Shown piece by piece: positions 1,909 to 28,462 of a DNA stretch of 56,705 nucleotides (its first letter is position 1; each line of letters starts with the position of its first letter). Position numbers and translations under genes: made by a program. A model generated the notes under the pieces. That model made no database searches. It was given only the letters and a program-made list of their open reading frames with translations, and had not been told where the DNA came from. The stretch is from Klebsormidium nitens (taxonomy: Eukaryota; Plantae; Klebsormidiophyceae), in contig DF237528.1 in NCBI GenBank assembly GCA_000708835.1, positions 1 through 56,705 of the forward strand, in the 5' to 3' direction.

Positions 1909-4900
1909 CTATGCATGACCGCATTTCTTGAGACAGCGCACCCCTTCCTCCTCGTACTCCTGCTTGCTGATCCAGAACTCGGGCTTGTCCTTCATGATGT
2001 CCGCGAGTACTGCCCCTCCCAAGAACACCATGTGGCGCCGCCGGGGAGGGTCCTCGATCCTCAACCGGAACTTTTTGAGGGCTTCCGTGTTTCCTTTCAG
2101 GACGTGCTGCAATCAGGAACAATGTACTGGGTCAGCGAATGTAGCCTGCTGATGGTGGAGCAGCAGATCATGAGCCGCAATCAACGGCTCTTCAAATCAT
2201 AGACAGAAAGCATCCTTGTCCAGAAAAGGCCGGTTAGCGGCCTGAGACGCCTTGTGCCGGTGCGTCGTTTCCGCCCTCCCCCGCGGCTGTTGGTGGGCGG
2301 TACCTGGAGGTAGCGCGCGCGCAGGTCGGCCTCGAGGCGGGAGGGCAGGCCGGGGTACATGGAGGAGCCGCCGGAGAGCACGATGTGCTGGTAGAGCGGC
2401 ATGCGGTTGTCGATGTCCATCTCCTGGATGCAGCGAAACACCAGCCCCGACAGGCCCTCGCCCTCGCAGTCCACCAGCTCCGGCCGGAACAGCGCCTCCG
2501 CCGCCTGGAACCGCTCCGCGCCCACCGAGATCACGCGCCCGTCCGGCAGCTGCGAGCAGACGCGGGGCGTTTCTCAAAGGTGCCAGTCAAGGAAGTGCTT
2601 CACGCGTAGTCTCAAGGACAGCGATGCTCAACAGCTGCGGTTATCCACGTCTCATCTTCAACTTTCACTGAGCGGGCACCCATGAGACAACCAAGACGAG
2701 ACTGTTCCCACTGCAAGGTAGGTATGGCCCACGCAGGGCTGTCTGGGGGCCTCACGGTGTAGTTCTTGACCAGGATGGTCGTCTCCTGCGCCAGCCGCAT
2801 CTCGCGCGCGTAGTCCGCACTGCAGCGCCAGGCACACCCACACCACGAGTCAGGCCCAGCAGCGTCCTCCGCAGCAGGCTTCAGCACCGCAGCAGGAAAG
2901 GCCGTACAGTCACAGGCCCCACCGGACAATACACCGGGCAGGGGGCCCCACGGATCCGGCCTGCCACAGTGGGGCACTTCGCCCTGGCTTCCTGGAACCA
3001 TGCAGCAGTGCAGGGCTGGGCGGGCGCGAGGGACTCACCTGACGTAGCAAAGCTGCTCTTTGATCTCGCGCACCGTCTCAAAATCGGCGGTGCGGTTGAA
3101 GGCATACCTGCCGAACAGGAAGAGTGACCCGTCAGGCCTGCCGCAGTGCATCGTCTAGTGTTCCCCATTCGACTTGCAAGAACACGGACATCGATTGCCC
3201 CAGCACAGCCAGTGCGATCTCACTGCCACATGCAAGCATGCCCACGCGGTGCGCGGGCGGGCGGGCTGTGCTGCTGGGGCAGGGCAGGGTGCTGACCCGC
3301 GGCGGGAGAGGAGGTCGATGAGGTGCGCCGTGATGTGGCGGCCGGCGACGTTCATCCGCTTGGTCAGGTGCGGGAATGCAAAGCCGTCCACCACCGGCAC
3401 CTGCAGCGACGCGCGCAGTCAGGGCACGGCGCAAGGGGGGCGCGCAACAGGGGGACGTGCCAGGCAGTACACACGCAGACCAGCACGGGGCAAGAGCCTG
3501 CACTTGGCACATCCTGCCACATTAGCGGTCCTTTTGTTCTTTCTGACCGGGGAGCAACGGCGGGGGCCCTCACCACGTGCGTGACCCCATCCCCGGAGTC
3601 CACCACCAGCCCCGTGAGCAGGCCTGCACAGCCAAGAGCGCACCGCCTCAGGTGGCCATGGGCGGGGGCGCAGTGCGGTCACAGCAGAGCAGCAGGGAAG
3701 AAAGCGCGACGTCAGGCGACAACTGAAGGCAGACAAGGGGGCAGCATGCACCGGAGCCAGCGCAAGGAGGAAGGGGCCTGCCCGCCCTGGTGGCAGCGAT
3801 GGGGGCGAGGAGTGTTACCCTGGGCGTAGAGCGTGAGGACGGCCTGGATCTGGATGAAGGCGCCAGCGAAGCCATACTTCTCAAACATGGTCTCTATCTG
3901 CAGCAACATGTGACCAAAGGGCACACTCTCAGTCAGTCCCACCAGGGCCGTCAGAATCTGGTGGCCAGGCAGGGGCAAGAACCCAGATCTCTATACGATT
4001 GCATTAAAGAAGCGAATGCTTGTAATGCTTCTCGGTCAGACTACACACAACATTCCGGCTAGAAATTTCCCGGGCTGGCCCGCAGCAGGGGCGCGCTCAC
4101 CATCTTCTCGCGGTTCTTGCTGGGGTTGAGGGGCGGGTCGGTGAGCAGGATGCGGCACTCGGAGGGGTCGATGCGCAGCTTGTCGTAGAAGGTGTGGTCC
4201 CAGATGTGGCCCATGTCCTCCCAGCTCTGCACAATGCCGTTCTGCACCGGGTAGCTCACCTCCAGCTGGGCACGCAGCGCGCTCGCACGCGCGCCCACCA
4301 CCACGTCCTGCACCACCGCCGCACTGCGGCTCAGAAGAGGGGTGGAGCAGCGCATATGCCAGGGAGCTAGGAATAGCTGCGGCAGAGCTCCAATGGGCAT
4401 TGGGACTGCTCCCAAAGAAGCATGAGCTTCAAGAGAATTGTGCCCACCATTCCTGGTCACAACCAAGATTACTAGGAAAGACTTTGGGGCGAAGCGCCTC
4501 ACCTCGAGGGCCTCTTGCCCCTGGGCTTCCTCATACCGCAGGATGGGGCGCCCCACCACACAAGGGAAGACAGCGCTGGGGAAGTTGTTGCCCGCAAAGC
4601 CACATTTGACGAACTGCAAAGGAGGCGGGCGCAAACATTTGTGACCACGTGTGAAGGTATGACTGGCATTTAACACTCCACCTGCAAAAGTTCTGGAACT
4701 TCACGGTTCTTCAATCAAAGAAGCCCCAACTACAGGGGCCTTTGGGGAACAGTTTGCTGGACAAAGAAGTGCACGAGGGCCACTGATTTACCGACATGAT
4801 TCCACGTGCTCTTTAAAGAGGCCTCCGCATGATTGAAGTTTTACCCCATGTCTTCCAGGTGCAGTATGAGCGTTGCCCCCAGTCATTTCACAATGAAGGA

Positions 4901-9775: not shown

Positions 9776-11339
9776 TCAGACGTTGTGCACGCTGGTGATG
9801 GGCGAGCGCGGCGACGTGGGCGAGCTGAAGGGCACCAGCACCGGGATCAGGTTCGCCTTGCGCCACCGCTGCGACACCTGCCAGCCAGCCACACACAACA
9901 GAGAGGGGCCGTCAGGGACACCGCTGACAGACATTGGAGGGCAGCGCGACTGAGGCCACGTGGGGAACAAAGAGCACCTCCAATCGAACCTCGGCCGTGA
10001 TCTCTGGTGAATCGTCATCCTAGCGCCAGCAGCAGCGGGCTTGCATGAGCCCGCGAGTGCGGGTGCCGGGAGCCGCACCTTGGCGAGGGTGAAGATGCCG
10101 AGCGCGAGCACGGTGATGCCCATGCCCAGACTGATGTAGAATGCCACCCCACCCACGCCGGCCTGCAGCGCCACACACAAATTGCGTGTCAGAAGACGGA
10201 CCAGCCTGCAGACCAGCTCTTGCCGACATGCTGTGCAAGCAGGAGAAACGGACTCCCAGCCGGATGGGGACCTGACGATGCTGTCACATCAACAGACGCA
10301 TCGCGCATGGTCGAGCCCTGCGACACACTGAGCTTTGGCGGATGCAAAGGCCGTTTGCTTCTGTGTGCAAACTAGCAGAGCATGGCGGGTGTGGTGCGGC
10401 GCTGACCTGGTCCTGCGAGTAGGCAAAGAGGTAGAAGAGCGCAACCATGGCGGCCAGCGTAACTAGGATGGTGGCAAACTCGGCGTAGAAGCCCAGGGAG
10501 GCGCAGCTGCAGAGCGCGTCCAGCGTGAGGTTGAGGCGCTCGCGCACGTGCAGGCGGTACGGCGCCTTGCACACCTCGCAGCTCAGCGCGGCCGCGTCCG
10601 GGACAGCAGGGTCCGCGCGCCGCCGCTCCAGCCACTGCTGCAGGCACCGCAGGTGCACGCGCGCCATGCTGCCGCCGCACAGGCACGGCCTGGGGGGGGA
10701 GAGAACGCAGAGAACGGGTCGGGGGGGGTACGGGAGAGAACGGGGCAAGGACTGGCATACTGATAAGAACCAACAGGCGATTGGTGTCAGAATGTTGACC
10801 GAATTCCTCATAAAGTTCCTACTTTGAGGCCCATGGATAACGTCCAAAAGAAGAATTCGAATAGCAAGAAACGCTTCATATTATAGGAGAGCTCGTTCTG
10901 ATGCTCGTTTTGGACTTCTCGCGCACCTGATCATCCGCTCCCCGCCCTCCCTCCCCTCCTTGCATATCCTGCACTCCTCCATCTCTATGCTCCCCTGCCG
11001 ACTGAGCGACGTCCTCTTGGTGGGGCTGCCCACCCCCCCCAGGCCTCCCCCCGCTGTCATGGGGGCCATGCTGGGCGCGCCTTGCCACCCCTGGCCAGTG
11101 CCGCCATGGCCGTCGCTGGCGCGGTGCGTGCGGATGGGCCGCAGGAGGGGCTGCTGCAGCACGAGCTCCCCCGCGGAGGGGGTGTGGCCGCGCAGCGCCC
11201 CGCTGAAGGTGACCGCGCGCGCAAGCGCCCCCGCCTTGGGGAGGCCCTCCTCCAGGCTGGCCTCGCTCGGCCAGTCAGGGCCCACCGTGTGGGCGTGCGC
11301 TATGCGGGGGGGCTCCAGCCGCCCACCTCCGCTGGCCAT
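9776..11339 (-). CDS. RING-CH (MARCH-type) membrane E3 ubiquitin ligase, paralog 1, about 293 aa (a 5' exon may lie in or beyond the gap)
   Basis: Exons 10927-11339, 10407-10689, 10079-10162, 9776-9877. CRIC..PCLCGGSMARVHLRCLQQW..CEVC (C4HC3) followed by two hydrophobic helices. Confidence 0.88.
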
Positions 11340-11493: not shown

Positions 11494-11876
11494 NNNNNNN
11501 NNNNNNNNNNNNNNNNNNNNNNNNNNNNNNNNNNNNNNNNNNNNNNNNNNNNNNNNNNNNNNNNNNNNNNNNNNNNNNNNNNNNNNNNNNNNNNNNNNNN
11601 NNNNNNNNNNNNNNNNNNNNNNNNNNNNNNNNNNNNNNNNNNNNNNNNNNNNNNNNNNNNNNNNNNNNNNNNNNNNNNNNNNNNNNNNNNNNNNNNNNNN
11701 NNNNNNNNNNNNNNNNNNNNNNNNNNNNNNNNNNNNNNNNNNNNNNNNNNNNNNNNNNNNNNNNNNNNNNNNNNNNNNNNNNNNNNNNNNNNNNNNNNNN
11801 NNNNNNNNNNNNNNNNNNNNNNNNNNNNNNNNNNNNNNNNNNNNNNNNNNNNNNNNNNNNNNNNNNNNNNNNNNNN
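11494..11876. other. Assembly gap (N run)
   Basis: 383 N. Confidence 0.99.
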
Positions 11877-17899: not shown

Positions 17900-18720
17900 T
17901 CAGCCGCGGCTGACCGCCGCTCAGCTGCAGCTCATGGAGCGATTGAGATGCACACTCGTTAGTCATCTGCTCACAGTACGCGCGCTGTCACTGTATGCAT
18001 GGCAACGTACCACGTTGGACGTGCGATTGAACCGTCTCGACTACACAGATCAACTGATCCATTATCAGTTGATCGAGTCTGCCAGGTGACCGTCATCGCC
18101 GTCTCCTTGTCATCTGCCTCGTGGTCCGACGGGCCCGCATGCTCAAGTTGTGCTCCAGTGCTTTATAATACATCTGAGTCATTGAATGCCATGCCTAATT
18201 GGCCTACAGAGTACGGTCACATACGTACTGTACGCGACGTCTGGCACATAGGAGTCACCGTGAGTCTGTCATTGTCACTTTATTATACTCCTCATCTCAT
18301 CGCACACCACTATAATCACTCTGTACGTTAACGCCTGACGACCCGGGCAGGCAAGCTTGACTTATGTATGATCGAACGACTCACTGGCGCTGGGCATGTA
18401 CAGAAAGCATACGTTGGGTAGCCTGCGCTGGGCACGAGAAATTAAGAGCGAATCTTCCATGTGGTCACTATCAAAATGGTTAATGACATACTGAGTCTCG
18501 CTAGGAACTCTGTCATGACTCACGTACCATTAACCTAAGTTACACAGAAGCGGAATCGGTACGGCCTTCGAAGGGCGCTACCGTACGACAAATCAGCCGG
18601 GAACTCGGCATCTGCATTGTTGCCCTGGTGTTCATTTGGTTAAGAGGAACTGTAAACGGCTAAGTTTGGATACATATCTCGAACACTCTATGCGTACTTG
18701 GGTTTTGCTTGAAAGGTACT
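17900..18720. other. Palindrome-word-rich island between convergent Sfi1-like and EGF-module genes
   Basis: GTAC/GATC/CATG/TACGTA-rich, no credible ORF; approximate limits. Confidence 0.55.
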
Positions 18721-18800
18721 AAGTCATGTCACGCCAGGTACCCAATAAGGTTAGAAGATTGAGATTGCAAAGCCAGAACACTTCAAAACCGAGCACAAGA

Positions 18801-21800
18801 TTACAAATTTGGCGTGAGGTAAGTTCCGCTCTTGCACCGGGGGAAGAAGCTGTCCGGGGGAACGAACCCGTCGCATCCCGCGGAGTCGCAGCAGATGTAT
18901 CTCCCCAGCGGGTCGTTGTTGTACCAGCAGCGCAAAGGGAAGCTTGCAGCGGCCCCGGTCCCGCACACGCCTAGGCATAAAACACGTGTCGATTGGCGTT
19001 TCGCCCCGGCCACAAGTGCATGATCTCAACTCTCCAGCTTGGCACCTACTGGTGGATCATGACGGGCCGCAGCCATTTCACCAACAAATAAAGACCTGAA
19101 GCTCTGACCTCTCGGGAACGATGACCGCTGATCCCAAACAGGCTTTCCGGGATTCGAAGAGGCAGATTGCAAATTGGGGTCGCGTGGCTGTGAGACAGCT
19201 GATAAAGCCAAGTCCCTTTTCTGCCCTAGTGACAGAGCGCCTTGAAACCTCCCCTACATGATATCGGCTCTCCTTTGCCGCCTTCCAGGTTGAAGGGAGT
19301 ATCAGCTTCTGAAAACAAGCGGACGGTAATTCATAAAGCTTTCTTTACGGTCGTACAAAGTGACCGGATCGCATGCGAGCTTTTTAAACCTACTGGCAGA
19401 GCCGTACAGAGTATTAACATGTTTAACACGCACGCGGAAACTCGTTGAGTCTGGGTGAAAAGGGGTTCCGTATTTGAAACACTTCCGCTTTCCGACTGCG
19501 ACGCATTTTCCATCAAACGGCCACGACCCTGAGAAACGCCACGTGAGCGGGTCGACAAAGCCTTTCAATAAACGCTTTGTGTATCGAACCAGGAGACATG
19601 GGAAGAGAAAAATGAGTCCGCTCACCCTGCGAGCCACTCGGAGGCTCAGGGGAGGGGGGCGACGCCCCGACGCCAAAGTTAGGTGGCACGTAGCCGTAGT
19701 TTTTGCAGTGGGGGGTCAGGTTGTCGGCGTTGAATCCGTCGCAGCCCTGCCCATCGCAGCAGACGTAGCGCCCCTGGGGGTCGCTGTTGAACCAGCACCG
19801 CGTCGGGAAGAAGGCCGCGTCGCCCGAGCCGCAAACACCTGCAGGGGACGGCACGCCTCGTGACGGCTTGCACAAAACACAGTGCCAACGCCTGTGTGGA
19901 ACCAGCTCAGCCCGAGCTTATGTTGCGGGTGAGCTTTGAAGCGACCGGATGATTCTGAACACAGTCGTGCACCAGTCGGAAGCGTGCTGGATCATTGATC
20001 CCCGGACTTCGATTGTTCATTAAGACGAGATTCGGTTTCACATCGATTCTGATCCTGCTGCAGAGTCGAGATGAATGGCGGGTAACCTTTTCGACGCAGC
20101 TTTTGAGAACCCAACCTGCTACTGAGGACGCACACTGCCCTGGAAAGGTGACATCAGTGGTTACGCTCAAGTGAAAGGAAGCAGCAAGAAGAACTTTCTG
20201 GAAACCAATCAGCTACTTGGGCACTACCTTTCCAACACGAGGGAGCGAATGAAGTTTCTTGGCGATTCTGCCGGGGCGACTCGTCCAGCTCCCCCGGAAC
20301 TTATAGATCTGACAAAATTCTCCATCGGCTGGATACGTCAACTGAACGATATGATTCGACGCCAAGACCGGCTGTGCAAAGAAGCAGAATGCATCGTAGT
20401 CTGGTCTCCGATCATCCCTGCTTGCAAAGAACAGAGTACGGCATGAGCTTGTGATTTAAGGAGACTGTTGCTGCCGGATAGGGTCAACCCCAAACGTCGA
20501 GACGAAAAAGCGGAGACTCTTAGCGGAGTATCGTACCTTCGGATCCACTCGGGAGGGGGCCCGACGGGGGCGAGGTTGCCGGGGGGGTAGACGGACTCGT
20601 CCCCACGCCGAAGCCAGGTGGCACGTAGCCATTGGCCTTGCAGTGGGGGAAGAGGTTGTCGGGGGGGTTGAAGCCGTCGCAGCCGGCCGCGTCGCAACAG
20701 ACGTAGCGCCCCTGAGGGTCGTTGTTGAAGTAGCACCGGACAGGGAACGCGGCCGCGGAGGTGAAGCCACAAACACCTGCCGAGTGGAACATGTGATACG
20801 TTTTGGAAGTGGCCCTTCGATCAGGAAGACCCGAGCTCAAGCTACAGTCTATCGTTCCCTTCCCGGATCTCCCAGCGACGCAGAGTCGAAAGTGCGCCTC
20901 AAGGGCCCATTGCTGCAAGTTCGCTAACGCGTCGGAAGGCAGCGGGCTGCACACACCCGCTCAGGAGAGGGATCGTGCATCTGTGTCTTTGGAGATAGTC
21001 TAGAGCGAGTTGCCCAGTTTGCGCCGTTTCGAATGCCGACTGATCTTTGAGATGCAATTGCACTCTTCGTTTGTCTCAATCTGCAATAGGAGCGGGTGGG
21101 AATAGCTAGTAGCTACGAGTTCGACGCTCGCTTTTTCTGAGCTTTTTCTATGCAACGGAGGCTTCTCAGATTTCTTCACTAGTCAAAGAAATCAAAGTCG
21201 TCCTTGCAGCCTCGAATCTAGGCCTCACCTTGAAAGCCGCTCGGTGGGGGGCTAGACTTCTTCACCGGTGTCGGGTACTGGCCATTCGGGACCCTGCACG
21301 CAAGATGTCCGTCATCAGACACGTCATGCACACGGGTTGGTCAAAAAGCCGCATTCGGATAATATGGAACAACCAGGGTTTGTTCATGCTGGGTTAGGTA
21401 CCATTGGACGGAACTCGTTTGCTCAGGGATTGGCGAGCCTCCTTATTCAAGCACGACCAAGCGGCAGACGAGGTAAGCAACCACATGACAGCTTAGTAGG
21501 AGCTGGATACCTTTGAAAAGCGTCTTTCAGAAGTTTTCTTTGTGAGAGTGCCGCCAGCGAATGAGAGCTGTTGAGCTCTTCAGGCCAGATGCAGACAAGG
21601 TCAACACAGGGGGGGATACTCCAGGAGCTCTCAAACTGGACGGCCAAGTTTGCGGAGACAACCGGTCAGAGCTGGATTCGCTTCAAGAACATATAGAGAA
21701 ATCCGGAACGCACATTCACATGTGGGTCGAAGCACCCATCTCTTACTTTCGAATCTCCAACAGGGGACGACTTGGATCACTCACGAAAGGGCGCAGGTCT

Positions 21801-23451
21801 TCCCGAGAAACCCAAAAGGGCAGGCGCAAGTGAAGTCGATGACCTGGTTGCTGTTCTCCCCCTCAGGGATGGGACCCAAACGGTTGCCAAACTGTACGCT
21901 GCATGTACCCCCGTTCTCGCAAGGGTTGGGACTGCATGGGTCCCGACCTGCACAGTAGAATTAGCCCTTTGCAAAAGCGGACGGCCAAGTGAGCCTGTTG
22001 ATGTGGATCATTGAAGTCCACGACGTCCTAAAGGGACTTTGTAAGTCCAGGCTGTTCTTGAGAGTACATTCAAGTGGGAAAGCGCAGGTGATTTTGCGAG
22101 GAGACTTTTCTGTGTAATCTGCATGTAAGGATTTTTTTTCGTAATGCTTCTGCAGAGCCACGTCGGAAGCTTTGGCAAGATTCCCAGGAGCGAATACGAC
22201 TAGGCCCGAACAGTACTTCATCTTATCATTCCAATACAATAGAGATACAGTTGAAAAAGGTCAAGTGCCCCTCGACTTATAAGGTCATGGCTGAGGTGCT
22301 AAGAGGTGGTTTGGTTGACAAATCGGTGGTCAGGGTAGAGGCTGTTACCTGGGATGAAGCAACTGATGTGATTCCCAATGCCCTTGGTACTCTGGTAGTC
22401 TCCTCGATAATATGGGGGGTTGCACACGCATATGTGCTGGTACGAATAACCAGCGATGGAGCCGGACGGGTTCTGCACACACACGTTGCCTGCAAGCACA
22501 CAAACAGAGAAGGGAAGTACATTATTAACCATGTTTGTCTGAAGCTCTTTCGAAAATCTTAAAGCTGCCAACTACCGTCTTGTGATGGCCACACCCACCA
22601 GGCAGATACTGAGTTCTCCCCATGAGAATAACAAAAGCGAAGGCCAATAGGAAAAAGATAATAAGGATACGGAGAGACAAAAGTGTCAAGGAAGTAGGAA
22701 ACTTGCATGGGTCCCACTCCTCAAACAAGACGGTGAAGTAGACGGGCTTTAGAGAAAGAGGTGAGGAGAAGTAAACAAGACAGTGAAGGATCAAGAAGAA
22801 ACAAAAGTCTGAATGGTAAGGTTGTGTCTTAGGCCCTTCTGAGGGGCCTGCAGGTTGAAACTTAGTTGAGAGCCAACGAGAATGACGAGCAGGGTTCTCT
22901 GCAGGTGTGTTGCAACAAAGAGAGCAGAGCCATAAACGAGAGGAAGCGGGAAGGATTGGGGCGCAGCAGCCATGCTTGATACCTCGCAGAATCTTCAGAT
23001 TGGGAGTTTTCCTTGATGATTTGATGTTGAGATACTGACAAAAATGTAATAAACAAACCACTGCAAGGCACTCATCTAGTAGACTCTGCACAGATTGGTG
23101 GAGGAGCTGGCAACCCCTTCCGGGAACCTTTGGTTCAAAAACAGCAGGAGATACCAAGGGTCTATTTGCTTGGCAGACACTGCCAGTAATGTCCATCCTT
23201 CCTTCCAGTTGGGCAGAATAGGCAATGAGAATGCCTCAAAGGAACATACCTGGGCCGCAGCCAACTACCTCATTGTAGCACTGATCGGCATCGCACTCAA
23301 CAAGGTCGGAGGTGCCCCGTTGGATAGGTATGAACCCCGGCGGGCAGGTGTAATCAGCTGCTAGTGCATTGGTATACTCCTGAGCTGATACTGAGAAAGG
23401 CGAGACGCACAAGAGCGCAAGCGCCACAACTAGGAGGCAAGTGGGTGCCAT
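18801..23451 (-). CDS. Secreted modular Cys-rich protein: signal peptide, 2 EGF-like modules, 3 tandem copies of an unrecognised 6-Cys module, Pro-rich linkers; 7 exons, 397 aa
   Basis: Exons 23250-23451, 22349-22489, 21785-21947, 21229-21293, 20537-20776, 19626-19838, 18801-18970; all GT-AG, intron phases 1,1,2,1,1,1, total 1194 nt open. N-term [24 protein letters not shown]; [31 protein letters not shown]. Confidence 0.85.
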
Positions 23452-24049
23452 CGCTGCTGCTTATCACAGAGAATGCTGGAAAACTGGACAGCTGGTGTGG
23501 AGAGCTCTCACAACATACAAGCAGCTGGAAGAGTTGTCGGATGCTCCTTGAAGTCGCAGGGCAAGTACTACTGTTAGAGGGAATTCTTCCCAGCGATTGT
23601 ATCAGTTTTTCAAGGGGAGGTGTGTTTGTAACCTGCTCGAGTGTCTGAAGCAATAACGACCAAGCAGCAAGTCGACTTCGACGAAAGCTCGGGTGCTACC
23701 GTGCTTGGATGGGCAAAAGACTGGAAGCCTCTGCAAGCTCTGCTCGATCAGGTACCGGAAGATGTTGGTCACATCGTCGTCAGGAGCAGCCCCAGCTACC
23801 AGCTTACATGTTAGATGATAATCAAGTTGAAAGGGCCTGCTGGCCAGCTTCAAGCTCCAACCCGATTGCATCTACGGTAGATCAAATCTCCAACTTCAGC
23901 AACTTGTCCAGCTGAGCTAGTTCGGGCAAAGCGGACATCCGACAAAAGCTCGCTGCTCCAGCTGCCAGCTCCAGGCTGTTCAGTTCTAAGCATTCAAGAC
24001 GCACCGTAGCGGCATTCCTGACTCCTGAGCAGCCTGCATGATTGATTCA

Positions 24050-25076: not shown

Positions 25077-26796
25077 CTAAGGTTCGCGTATTGACTCAGG
25101 CGTCCTTGCGGGCGTGGTGATGTTCATGCTGGCGCGCAGCATCCAGGAGGTCGGATACACGCTGTCCCGCGCCGCCTCTGCGCGCAAGTGCCACACCAGC
25201 ACCTCCCGGCAGTCGTCCGCCAGCCCCTCCATCTCCGCCTCACTGCCCACCAGCTGCTCGATAAACGTCGTCTCCTGGAACCCCTCCTTGATGTTATCCC
25301 GGAACCGAACCGGCGCGTTCCTCCGCCGTCCCTCACCCCCTGGCTCCCACATCAGCGACGAATTGAACGCAAAGCCGCACAGGTCCGAGTGGAAGCGCCG
25401 CTGCGCCGCGCTCTCTTCGCTGGTGTGCCACCCGATGACCCGCCCCCCGGCGCACACAGGCCCCTCGATCGTCGTCTTCTCGGCGCCTTCCACGAGCATG
25501 GCCACCGGCAGGACGCCAAAGCGCTTGACCTTGCGGATCTCCTCAAAGAGCTCGACGCTGTAGTTGTTGTCGTCGTCCGCAAAGTAGACGATGCCCTGCA
25601 GCGCGTGCTGCTGGATGTGGTCGAGCGCGTGGTTGCGCTGGTGCACGCCGCGGTCCTTGTGCTGCGGGCTGAATTGCTGCACCACCAGGTGGCGGTACAT
25701 CAGCCCCGTGCGCATCAGCAGCGCCACGCTCTCCTCGCTCTGCCACCCCGTCTCTACCACGATCCACAGCACCGGCGGCCGCACCAGGCGCAGCGTGTGC
25801 GCCAGCCGCGTCAAGTACATCGCCTGCCAGGACAGATGGCATAGGGTGAGAAGAAGAAACTAAGGTCCCAGCCACTTTATCTCGAACAGAGAGGAGGAGG
25901 ACTATACTCGTGTGACCCGAACAGGACTGTTGCAAACGAGACGGACAAAACAGGACGCATCTTTTCTGCATCACCCTCCTGAAAGTTCGCTCCATGCTGA
26001 GCGTCCAGCCAATAGTGGACCAGGAACGGATTCATTAACAGCCAACAAGCAAGGGCGCCCTGTTTTCGCTGGTAAAAAGGTGTAACAAAGGACCCCTGCG
26101 ACATGACACGAAAGCGGCATAACTCCTTCAGATGACTTTCTCGGATGCAAACCTTGCTTCGCTCACTTTCTCGACTTTGTCAATGGCTTGGGGCCAAGTC
26201 TGCTGGGATCATAGATATGCCTCCATCCATTGCCGCATTGCGGGGAAGGAAGAGTGTGGATGGCAGCCCGCTTAAAAGCAATGCATACCGCATTACGATA
26301 TCGTGGTTCGAAAAGATAATTGCCCCACCCTGCCGTTCCCTGGAAATGTTACCGTTTTTCAAGCAACAGTGGTCAGATTCGAAGAAGCATCATTTGCAGC
26401 CTGCCAGCACAGCCTGTTCAAATCTGTCGAGAACTTCATGGATGATGCCAAGTCCGTGTCATAAGGACATGCCAGATCTCCAACATGGGGGCTGCCCGTG
26501 CCTTCATTTGTCCACTATAGGTCAAAGACGTCGGTGTTGTTGCCGCGGGCGCCTCACCTGGAAGGGCCGATTGTACGTGGGTGTGACAATCAGCAGCTGG
26601 ACGGGCGCCTCGAGGCGTGGCTGCGCCGGCAGCTGCTGTTGCACCAGGATGCGGCTGGCCCCCGCACCCACCAGGCCGCGCTGCTCATCCTCAAGGGCCT
26701 GCCCCGGGAAGCTGTGGGAGACGGCGTCCGGAAAAGAGGCCTCGAAGCGGCGCGTGTCAAACACCCCCAGCAAAAAGCCGAGCAGGAAACAGAACC
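25077..26796 (-). CDS. GT43 glycosyltransferase, IRX9/IRX9L-like (xylan backbone synthesis complex); 5' exon unresolved
   Basis: Exons 26558-26796 (FLLGFLLG TM, LLIVTPTYNRPFQ) and 25077-25823 (YLTRLAHTLRLV, DRGVHQRN, YFADDDN, IEGPVC..VIGWHT, GFAFNS, KEGFQETTFIEQLV). Confidence 0.93.
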
Positions 26797-28462
26797 CTGG
26801 GGGGAAAGAGGAAGAGAGCGCAGCAAGCGTTGGGCAGTGAAAGCGGATCTTTCTTACAGCTGTCTGCAGAAAACTTAAGGATGCGCTGATCTTCCTTGCT
26901 CAGGTCAAAACGCAGCGTTCAACAGGAGTCGGTGCCACGAAAGCTGGTGTCGAACACCGTTTGAACTTCTCGAGTAGCATGGTTTTGGAAGCCTGGGGCA
27001 CAACAGAATGGAGATGATGTCATCTTTGCGATCGGGAACAGGGCCGTTCATATGGCCCCATTGGTGATACGCACTGATGTTCACCGAGCACCAGCAACCC
27101 TGATCTAACTCCCCTCACACCTTCGCGCCTTCAGGTTGTTCATAAGTTGCACTTAATATGGGGAAAGAGCAAAACGAATGTCGATGCTCCCGACTTTCTC
27201 CATGCAATAACAGCCAGCACACATTTCTTGAAGAGGAGAAGCCGGCTGTTCTGGCGGAACACTTCAAGTCTTGGCAGCATTTTCCGTCTTCCCTGTGAGA
27301 GTGTCATGAGAGGCCCCACTATGCTGCAATGAAAAACATCATGGCGGCACCACCGTTGTGGAATGAAGAGCCTGAAAACTCACCCAGGAGCAGTGGCCTT
27401 CGATTGTTGAGCAAGCTTCCTATTATTGGCGCGTGCTTTGCCATCGGCTTCCCTCCCCCAGGTGGCATTCGTGGGTTGGCTTACCCCCTAAGCAACAGCC
27501 CGCCAGCACTACGATGGCAACATCTGCATCAAAATCTTAGCAGCTTGCAGACGTGGCTACAACTTCCAGAAAACTAAAACAGCTTACAACCACGTCCTTA
27601 AAAACTCCTGAATCCAGAGTCTCTCGTGAATCTAATCTTCCAAGTCCACAACCTGGGTCATTACTAGCTATCACAATCTGCACTACTGTATCAAGGCCCT
27701 CGGCGCGTTAAAGCCCAAGCATAGATTGGCACATCATCCAAGACAAGAGGCACATTGCAGATTGCGGTCTTCAAAATGCAGGAGAGCGTCACGTCCAGGG
27801 ACGGTCAAGAGAGGAGACTTGAGCTGAGAAATGTAGCTAGACACTTCACTTCTGAAATAGTGAAAGTTCTGCCCCTTGCATGCTGACCAGTTGGTAAATC
27901 GTGCTTTGTTGGTCAATGGTCATATATTCTTATCATTTGTGGTATTCGTTGGAAATCTGCCGGGTTTCGCGCGAAGGTTCTTCAACGTTCAAGAGACCCG
28001 TCATGACCATACTGAGAAGATCTCTAGAAGTTTTGGAGCTTTCCACAAAGTCCAGCTTAATATATTCCTGAGGCTACCGGTATAATCTAAAAATTCAACG
28101 TGCGCGAGTCGATTGAAGAAGTTCTGGATGACTCGGTTGTTGCTAGCGTGAGTCCTGATTATCTACCAGTGCAAGGAGAGGGCAGGGGCGCAAAATAATC
28201 AGCAGACGCTGTAGGCTGTGTAGCAGCAAGCTCAGAGCGTCCTGAAATCAAGAAGAGGGCCACGAAATTTGGGCATCAATTGCTCGAAAGTTGCTTCTGC
28301 GCCAGCTCCTGATTGAAGCGCACCAAAAAGTAGCGGAAAAGCATAGAGCGGAGGGTGGAAAGCGCCATTCAGCAGTTGCTGAACGAGATTCACGTACGGG
28401 TCACTTGTGAGGGCTGTGTGGGACGTGCTTGGTGGTGGGAGGTGCCTGTCGCTGAGTGAGCC

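What the first reader, a model, noticed from the sequence alone, without database searches (positions are those of the whole stretch)
18801..23451. Hidden 7-exon gene for a secreted EGF + novel Cys-module protein (top candidate)
Seen: scattered ORF fragments plus two exons not shown in this frame in the ORF track (21785-21947, 21229-21293) splice into one 397-aa ORF: signal peptide, CPPGF..C half-module, EGF-like 1 preceded by DADQC (resembles the D-x-D-E/Q-C calcium-binding EGF start), EGF 2, linker, three 6-Cys modules; 32 Cys in the mature chain, no TM helix. Established: land-plant EGF domains occur mostly in membrane receptors (WAKs, S-domain kinases, vacuolar sorting receptors). Inference: a soluble multivalent extracellular adhesion, wall-crosslinking or ligand protein of an architecture I do not recognise.
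Basis: partly seen in the sequence, partly recalled or inferred. Interest (0 to 1): 0.85.

Follow-up and report, generated by a model that had tools for sequence, protein, structure and literature searches.

The report
Klebsormidium secreted EGF–cysteine-module protein
This is a real, spliced and already annotated but unstudied gene of the land-dwelling alga Klebsormidium nitens; it is one of at least 15 genes whose mostly secreted proteins carry a small six-cysteine module that matches no known family or structure and probably grips the cell wall, though what it binds is untested.

Summary
The 7-exon, 397-aa model is correct. All six GT-AG introns appear in transcript-like contigs from four studies. 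It is not hidden: it equals annotated K. nitens KFL_005790050. Layout: signal peptide, one short Cys loop, an EGF-like unit, a Pfam EGF, and three C-x11-C-x11-CC-x4-C-x11/12-C modules on Pro/Ser/Thr linkers; no TM or GPI tail. The calcium-binding DADQC motif is not conserved (1 of 17 homologues). The module occurs in at least 15 K. nitens genes and in K. subtile, behind unrelated heads (EGF pair, LDL-receptor A, Ig-like, signal peptide only), usually after a phase-1 intron, which suggests exon shuffling. It folds confidently (pLDDT 89) but matched no Pfam family or PDB, BFVD or Atlas structure, and it lacks the hevein chitin-binding signature; cystine-knot connectivity is untested. Best reading: a multivalent wall or mucilage-binding tether (about 0.5), inferred and not shown. 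The scan had already reported this module and architecture on other K. nitens scaffolds (s1-313253 and others).

The parts
23452..23976 (-). 5' untranslated region (about 525 nt) with five upstream ATGs
   Evidence: contigs begin at 23924-23976; uATGs listed
23602..23871 (-). 89-codon upstream ORF inside the 5' UTR, ending before the main ATG; function untested
23250..23451 (-). coding exon 1: signal peptide (aa 1-23, 23451-23383), two-Cys loop C36-C53 (CPPGF...C), first two Cys of EGF-like unit 1
22490..23249 (-). intron 1, 760 nt, phase 1
22349..22489 (-). exon 2: rest of EGF-like unit 1 (six-Cys EGF-type spacing overall; no Pfam EGF hit)
21948..22348 (-). intron 2, 401 nt, phase 1
21785..21947 (-). 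exon 3: EGF domain 2 (Pfam PF00008, 25.8 bits, above the gathering cut-off of 21.5), with a long loop insertion
21294..21784 (-). intron 3, 491 nt, phase 2
21229..21293 (-). exon 4: Pro/Ser/Thr-rich linker
20777..21228 (-). intron 4, 452 nt, phase 1
20537..20776 (-). exon 5 (phase 1-1): six-Cys module 1 (Cys1-Cys6 at 20771-20640) plus linker
19839..20536 (-). intron 5, 698 nt, phase 1
19626..19838 (-). exon 6 (phase 1-1): six-Cys module 2 (19833-19705) plus linker
18971..19625 (-). intron 6, 655 nt, phase 1
18801..18970 (-). exon 7 coding part: six-Cys module 3 (18965-18834), ten more residues, TAA; no hydrophobic tail
18454..18800 (-). 3' untranslated region, TGTAA at 18544

Best explanation
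A secreted, non-enzymatic wall or mucilage protein of Klebsormidium nitens. Shown: it is transcribed and spliced; the protein has a signal-like N-terminus, no membrane anchor and no catalytic domain. Predicted: each six-Cys module folds into a compact small beta domain. Inferred: the three modules bind a repeated, invariant extracellular ligand, most likely a wall or mucilage polysaccharide, through conserved aromatic and Asn/Asp residues, and gain avidity by repetition. The Pro/Ser/Thr linkers act as O-glycosylated flexible stalks. The EGF pair is a rigid head that binds a partner protein or dimerises. The protein thus tethers or cross-links wall components. The same module, moved as a phase-1 exon, anchors other extracellular heads.
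For: All introns confirmed. No TM or GPI tail. AlphaFold pLDDT 89, four short strands; a shorter variant gives pLDDT 80 with the same strand order. The module sits behind different heads: EGF pair; LDL-receptor A (PF00057, 29.1 bits, above the cut-off); a DUF7933-like domain (below the cut-off); another non-EGF head plus EGF; or a signal peptide alone. That pattern fits a portable binding or anchoring module. Aromatic residues are kept at positions 10, 15, 16, 24, 35 and 50 in 96-100% of 54 modules, with invariant N17, D19 and near-invariant D28 and D/N33. Purifying selection: exon 6 against the L001 copy has 15 synonymous and 4 replacement codon differences. Paralogous modules are up to 87-98% identical, not hypervariable. 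Linkers are 26% Pro and 21-33% Ser+Thr; module pI 4.7-6.1. A phase-1 intron lies exactly at the module's first Gly in 12 of 15 copies examined, including the LDLa host. A wall glycoprotein framework has been proposed for this alga (PMC4927632).
Against: No binding, localisation or proteomic data were found. No sequence or structural match to any known carbohydrate-binding module. I could not inspect the model's coordinates, so I cannot say whether the conserved aromatics form an exposed platform or a buried core. None of the hosts I recovered is an enzyme; an enzyme-borne six-Cys module is reported only in unchecked scan notes (s1-282088) and may be a different module.
Confidence: 0.5

Rival explanations
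1. A self-assembling surface or adhesive protein: the modules bind each other or abiotic surfaces and build the film-like, water-repellent layer or the glue that fixes filaments to rock and bark, in the manner of fungal hydrophobins or mussel EGF foot proteins.
For: Small disulfide-rich modules with 8 aromatic residues each. Summed contig depth over exon 6 reaches 48-2146 against about 10 for the gene's own contigs, with loose ends that read as paralogous modules; this hints that some paralogues are abundant, though the tool warns that contig depth is a poor measure of expression. Film-like structures and a lipid-glycoprotein layer form on solid medium (PMC4927632).
Against: The Cys pattern is six-Cys C-C-CC-C-C, not the eight-Cys hydrophobin pattern (own knowledge). 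No fold match. The mussel PVFP-5 hit is a generic EGF match. Single-module fusions to LDLa or Ig-like heads fit an anchor better than a polymer subunit.
Confidence: 0.2
2. A defence lectin or precursor of antimicrobial knottin-like peptides, like hevein hololectins: the tandem modules bind microbial glycans or are cut out as peptides.
For: The C-C-CC-C-C spacing class and tandem arrangement are those of hevein and knottin precursors (PMC9127739, PMC4695807). The shortest variant (C-x5-C-x9-CC-x3-C-x11-C) is near plant knottin spacing. Some relatives are only signal peptide, an RRSLL-type motif and two modules.
Against: The hevein signature (S-x-aromatic-G-aromatic in loop 3; G-x4-aromatic in loop 4) is present in 0 of 64 modules. 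No Chitin_bind_1 or knottin Pfam hit among 64 modules at E up to 10. No structural hit. Modules are neutral to acidic and highly conserved between paralogues, unlike typical cationic, fast-evolving antimicrobial peptides (own knowledge). The Pro-rich linkers lack conserved cleavage sites.
Confidence: 0.15
3. A secreted signalling ligand or decoy that binds a cell-surface receptor through the EGF head or the modules.
For: EGF2 resembles Notch, Delta and Del-1 type EGF repeats. The long 5' UTR with upstream ORFs may indicate translational control.
Against: The EGF hits are generic. A family of 15 or more genes with near-identical modules and glycosylation-type stalks fits matrix proteins better than specific ligands. 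No receptor link was found; the neighbours are a GT43 gene and RING-v and actin-family genes.
Confidence: 0.1

Closest known systems
K. nitens KFL_005790050 (kfl00579_0050), 'hypothetical / EGF-like domain-containing protein'
   Same: Identical 397-aa sequence, on a contig of 56,705 bp.
   Different: Nothing; the annotation names only the EGF domain and gives no function or name for the three modules.
Hevein (CBM18) domains and tandem hololectins such as wheat germ agglutinin
   Same: Secreted; tandem small modules with C-C-CC-C-C spacing (PMC9127739).
   Different: Loops 1, 2 and 4 are much longer (11, 11, 11-12 residues); chitin-binding signature absent in 0 of 64; no Pfam or fold match; Pro/Ser/Thr stalks and an EGF head.
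Knottins / inhibitor cystine-knot peptides (e.g. PAFP-S type)
   Same: Six Cys with adjacent CysIII-CysIV; a small beta-rich predicted fold.
Fungal and algal CBM1-type appended carbohydrate-binding modules on Pro/Ser/Thr linkers (own knowledge)
   Same: Works-like analogy: small disulfide module, conserved aromatics, glycosylation-type linker, several unrelated host domains.
   Different: Different Cys pattern, no sequence or fold match; the hosts I recovered are non-catalytic.
Animal class 1-1 exon-shuffled extracellular mosaic proteins (EGF, LDLa modules; own knowledge)
   Same: Modules bounded by phase-1 introns, combined with EGF and LDL-receptor A domains.
   Different: The module itself is found only in Klebsormidium among named sources; EGF2 ends at a phase-2 intron here; some copies lack the boundary intron or carry internal introns.

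Membership tests
EGF-like domain (PF00008), EGF2 | Six Cys in EGF spacing and a score above the Pfam gathering cut-off | tested here: met
   25.8 bits against 21.5; the family profile hits Del-1, Notch1 and Delta EGF repeats
EGF-like domain, EGF1 | Six Cys with C4-x-C5 and a Pfam EGF-clan score | tested here: inconclusive
   Six Cys at 58, 65, 71, 88, 90, 111, conserved in paralogues. No Pfam EGF hit, but the domain is split over exons 1 and 2; paralogue fragments holding the whole unit hit Pfam EGF best at EGF2
Calcium-binding EGF (EGF_CA, PF07645) | Conserved D/N-x-D/N-E/Q-C before Cys1 | tested here: not met
   Present in this protein only, 1 of 17 homologues
Calcium-binding EGF (EGF_CA, PF07645) | C3-x-D/N-x4-Y/F-x-C4 second ligand motif and an EGF_CA profile hit | tested here: not met
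   16 residues between C3 and C4, no D/N at +2; no EGF_CA hit for the exons or for whole paralogue EGF regions
Hevein / CBM18 | CXnCXnCCXnCXnC motif | tested here: met
   definition from PMC9127739
Hevein / CBM18 | S-x-aromatic-G-aromatic in loop 3 and G-x4-aromatic in loop 4 | tested here: not met
   0 of 64 modules; loop 3 is D-x-x-G
Hevein / CBM18 | Pfam Chitin_bind_1 hit or structural match to hevein | tested here: not met
Knottin / ICK | Six Cys with disulfides I-IV, II-V, III-VI forming a knot | not testable with these tools
   The structure tool returns no coordinates or disulfide list
Knottin / ICK | Structural similarity to solved knottins | tested here: inconclusive
Hydrophobin | Eight-Cys C-CC-C-C-CC-C pattern (own knowledge) | tested here: not met
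   Six Cys per module with a single CC; no hydrophobin Pfam hit
Land-plant EGF receptors (WAK, S-domain RLK, VSR) | Transmembrane helix, with kinase or PA/VSR domains | tested here: not met
   No TM after the signal peptide; the transcript ends after module 3
Carbohydrate-binding module (functional class) | Demonstrated binding to a glycan | not testable with these tools
   Needs a binding assay

The most novel reading that the evidence does not exclude
The module is a small disulfide fold not yet in the PDB and a new class of wall-binding domain. Klebsormidium spread it by phase-1 exon shuffling onto EGF, LDL-receptor A and Ig-like heads, building an animal-style mosaic extracellular matrix that forms the glycoprotein framework of its cuticle-like layer.
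Probability: 0.2. Interest if true: 0.65.

Novelty: new variant of a known kind. Interest (0 to 1): 0.42.

Why it matters
The wall proteins that let Klebsormidium stick to surfaces and survive drying are unidentified in the papers I could search, although a glycoprotein framework has been proposed (PMC4927632). This family gives concrete, small, expressible candidates, and the module's ligand can be tested directly on glycan arrays. If it binds a wall glycan, it would be a new binding-module family and a probe for streptophyte algal walls. The gene itself is already annotated, the module appears limited to one genus, and the scan had already reported it elsewhere in this genome, which limits the surprise.

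Tried and rejected
No hit for the module in Pfam (7 exons; 64 modules), PDB sequences (two chance hits), Foldseek PDB, VIA wide and second look, BFVD, ESM Atlas by shape (48, best TM 0.47) or by features, bacterial and archaeal genomes, viral contigs or phages. The weak phmmer hits P0021 and P0023-P0025 (E 1e-6 to 5e-4; bacterial-type repeat and other unrelated proteins) lack the six-Cys pattern and were rejected. L007 is a chance motif match. Calcium-binding EGF rejected. Hevein and hydrophobin membership rejected. The module profile is unrelated to the EGF region profile. A fasciclin-like head in P0005 was suspected by eye but not confirmed by Pfam or PDB. A search for further relatives of the second (B-type) module found only itself. 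No paper mentions kfl00579_0050 or describes the module. The module tree is poorly resolved; it shows only that terminal modules cluster apart from inner ones (6 changes against 15 shuffled). Functional linkage with the neighbouring GT43 gene was considered and not supported: the L001 homologue shares no flanking similarity with the window, and other paralogues have unrelated neighbours.

Full report
Observation. On the minus strand, exons 23451-23250, 22489-22349, 21947-21785, 21293-21229, 20776-20537, 19838-19626 and 18970-18801 join into 1194 nt, 397 codons plus TAA. All introns are GT..AG, in phases 1, 1, 2, 1, 1, 1. There are 32 Cys after residue 23, GC3 is 0.74, and the only strong hydrophobic segment is at residues 5-23. 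Twenty runs from eight studies hold part of the stretch, eighteen of them 22-30% of its words, about the exon share. Contigs of four runs from four studies skip exactly 760, 401, 491, 452, 698 and 655 nt, with no letter differences; the transcript runs from about 23976 to 18454. The tool lists these runs as RNA by guess only, but intron-less contigs are what spliced transcripts give. One contig spans exons 1-5 into exon 6, another runs from exon 6 to the 3' end; no single contig spans the whole gene, because the repeat breaks the assembly.

Method note. Database searches and folds were run exon by exon by window reference, or with homologous database proteins. The joined model was not sent to any database search or fold tool, and that step is left out. 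I did join the exons inside a script to check the frame, and used that copy for local tblastn against the window and three fetched loci. The database's own full-length record, P0004, came back as a hit; I used it only in local scripts and never as a query.

Identity. P0004 equals the model residue for residue. It is listed as hypothetical protein KFL_005790050 of Klebsormidium nitens, 'EGF-like domain-containing', on a contig of 56,705 bp. The upstream neighbour is a GT43 gene, matching kfl00579_0060 in PMC4449007. So the gene is annotated and not hidden. I found no paper on it or on the module.

Anatomy. After the signal peptide come a two-Cys loop (C36-C53), a six-Cys EGF-like unit 1 (C58-C111) and EGF2 (C119-C166). 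EGF2 passes the Pfam cut-off, and the family profile hits Del-1, Notch and Delta EGF repeats. The short loop looks like the last disulfide loop of an EGF repeat (inference) and is kept in most paralogues. DADQC is present in this protein only, 1 of 17 homologues, and no EGF_CA hit was found, so calcium binding is not supported. Three modules follow, C-x11-C-x11-CC-x4-C-x11/12-C, separated by linkers of 26% Pro and 21-33% Ser+Thr; module pI is 4.7-6.1. The protein ends ten residues after the last Cys, with no hydrophobic tail.

Family. A phmmer search of 1.84 billion representatives with exon 7 gave 24 hits, 20 of them carrying the module in whole or part. A further search added paralogues. Named sources are only K. 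nitens (15 genes including this one) and K. subtile; the rest are unnamed metagenome or sequencing-run contigs. Nothing was found in bacterial, archaeal, viral or phage collections. Most hosts have the same signal-EGF-EGF-modules layout. A gene in L001 has the same seven-segment structure. Other hosts differ: LDL-receptor A repeats (PF00057 above cut-off), a DUF7933-like domain (below cut-off), an unassigned head plus EGF, another Cys-rich head (L005), or a signal peptide alone. Two shorter variants with the same six Cys and the Pro before the last Cys occur in the same proteins. A phase-1 intron lies exactly at the module's first Gly in 12 of 15 copies examined, including two in the unassigned-head gene and the one in the LDLa gene. 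One more lies two codons upstream. In L001-L003 the introns are inferred from acceptor context, not from RNA. Exons 5 and 6 here are symmetric phase 1-1. This supports spread by exon duplication and shuffling. Exon 6 against its L001 counterpart shows 15 synonymous and 4 replacement codon differences. Paralogous modules reach 87-98% identity. Aromatics at six positions and N17, D19, D28, D/N33 are kept in 96-100% of 54 modules.

Mechanism. The best reading (0.5) is a multivalent tether in the wall or mucilage: modules that bind an invariant repeated ligand, probably a polysaccharide, on glycosylated stalks, with an EGF head for protein contact. Expression, splicing, domain layout, family structure and conservation are shown. 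Secretion is inferred from sequence. Fold is predicted. Ligand and location are inferred from the portable-module pattern and by analogy with appended carbohydrate-binding modules (own knowledge). Rivals are a self-assembling surface or adhesive protein (0.2), a defence lectin or peptide precursor (0.15) and a signalling ligand (0.1). Context: a lipid-glycoprotein surface layer has been proposed for this alga (PMC4927632). Two paralogues appear with higher second values in the high-light gene table of PMC9121098 (kfl00024_0070, 9.1 to 18.5; kfl00180_0070, 22.0 to 75.1; column headings not read); this gene was not found in the held text. The depth spike over exon 6 and loose ends matching paralogue sequences hint at more abundant family members, but contig depth cannot rank genes.

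Earlier scan notes. The same module and architecture were noted on other scaffolds of this genome (s1-313253 with a follow-up; s1-348817, s1-305643, s1-299410, s1-323186). Notes on six-Cys add-on modules on enzymes (s1-282088, s1-290849) may concern this module's shorter variants or a different one; I could not test that. These notes are leads, not support.

Verdict. A real, expressed, already annotated gene; one member of a Klebsormidium-restricted family built from known EGF domains and an undescribed six-cysteine module. New variant of a known kind (secreted modular Cys-rich wall proteins). Interest 0.42.

Noticed in passing
window 23452-23976 (-): The transcribed leader is about 525 nt and has five upstream ATGs, including an 89-codon ORF at 23871-23602; possible translational control.
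   Followed up: partly
window 19637-19827 and 20592-20782: Summed contig depth is up to 2146 and 113 against about 10 for this gene's contigs. Loose ends at 20739 and 19754 read as paralogous module sequence, so some paralogues may be far more abundant.
   Followed up: partly
window 25077-26830 (-): GT43 glycosyltransferase gene (kfl00579_0060, PMC4449007) lies directly upstream on the same strand; no evidence of functional linkage.
   Followed up: partly
window 21947-21785 (-): EGF2 has C2-ENGGT-C3, which fits the animal POFUT1 O-fucose consensus; Thr is kept in most but not all paralogues. It is also the generic EGF consensus, so it may mean nothing.
   Followed up: no
L001 7207-7281 and 8286-8348: Decayed partial copies of the module with in-frame stops lie just before intact module exons, suggesting ongoing exon duplication and loss.
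   Followed up: no
P0011, P0041, P0042, P0014 and L005 ORF: Several module-bearing relatives have an RRSLL, RRLLQ or RHLLQ motif after the signal peptide, resembling a site-1 protease cleavage motif (own knowledge); this gene lacks it.
   Followed up: no
L008 3001-5333 (P0005, KFL_002360050): The N-terminal 150-residue head resembles a fasciclin domain by eye but had no Pfam or PDB support.
   Followed up: partly
P0007 (KFL_006180020), P0034 (KFL_004990060), P0008 (KFL_000240060): These annotated paralogue models look mis-spliced or incomplete: no signal peptide, an intron-like insert, or a missing part of EGF1.
   Followed up: no
window 18954-19583: Short low-depth contigs lie inside intron 6 in all four runs, and one joint suggests an alternative acceptor near 18995; probably unspliced or minor transcripts.
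   Followed up: no
window 4062-4676 (-), 10287-10847 (-), 11494-11876: An actin-family exon, a RING-variant exon and an assembly gap of 383 N.
   Followed up: no
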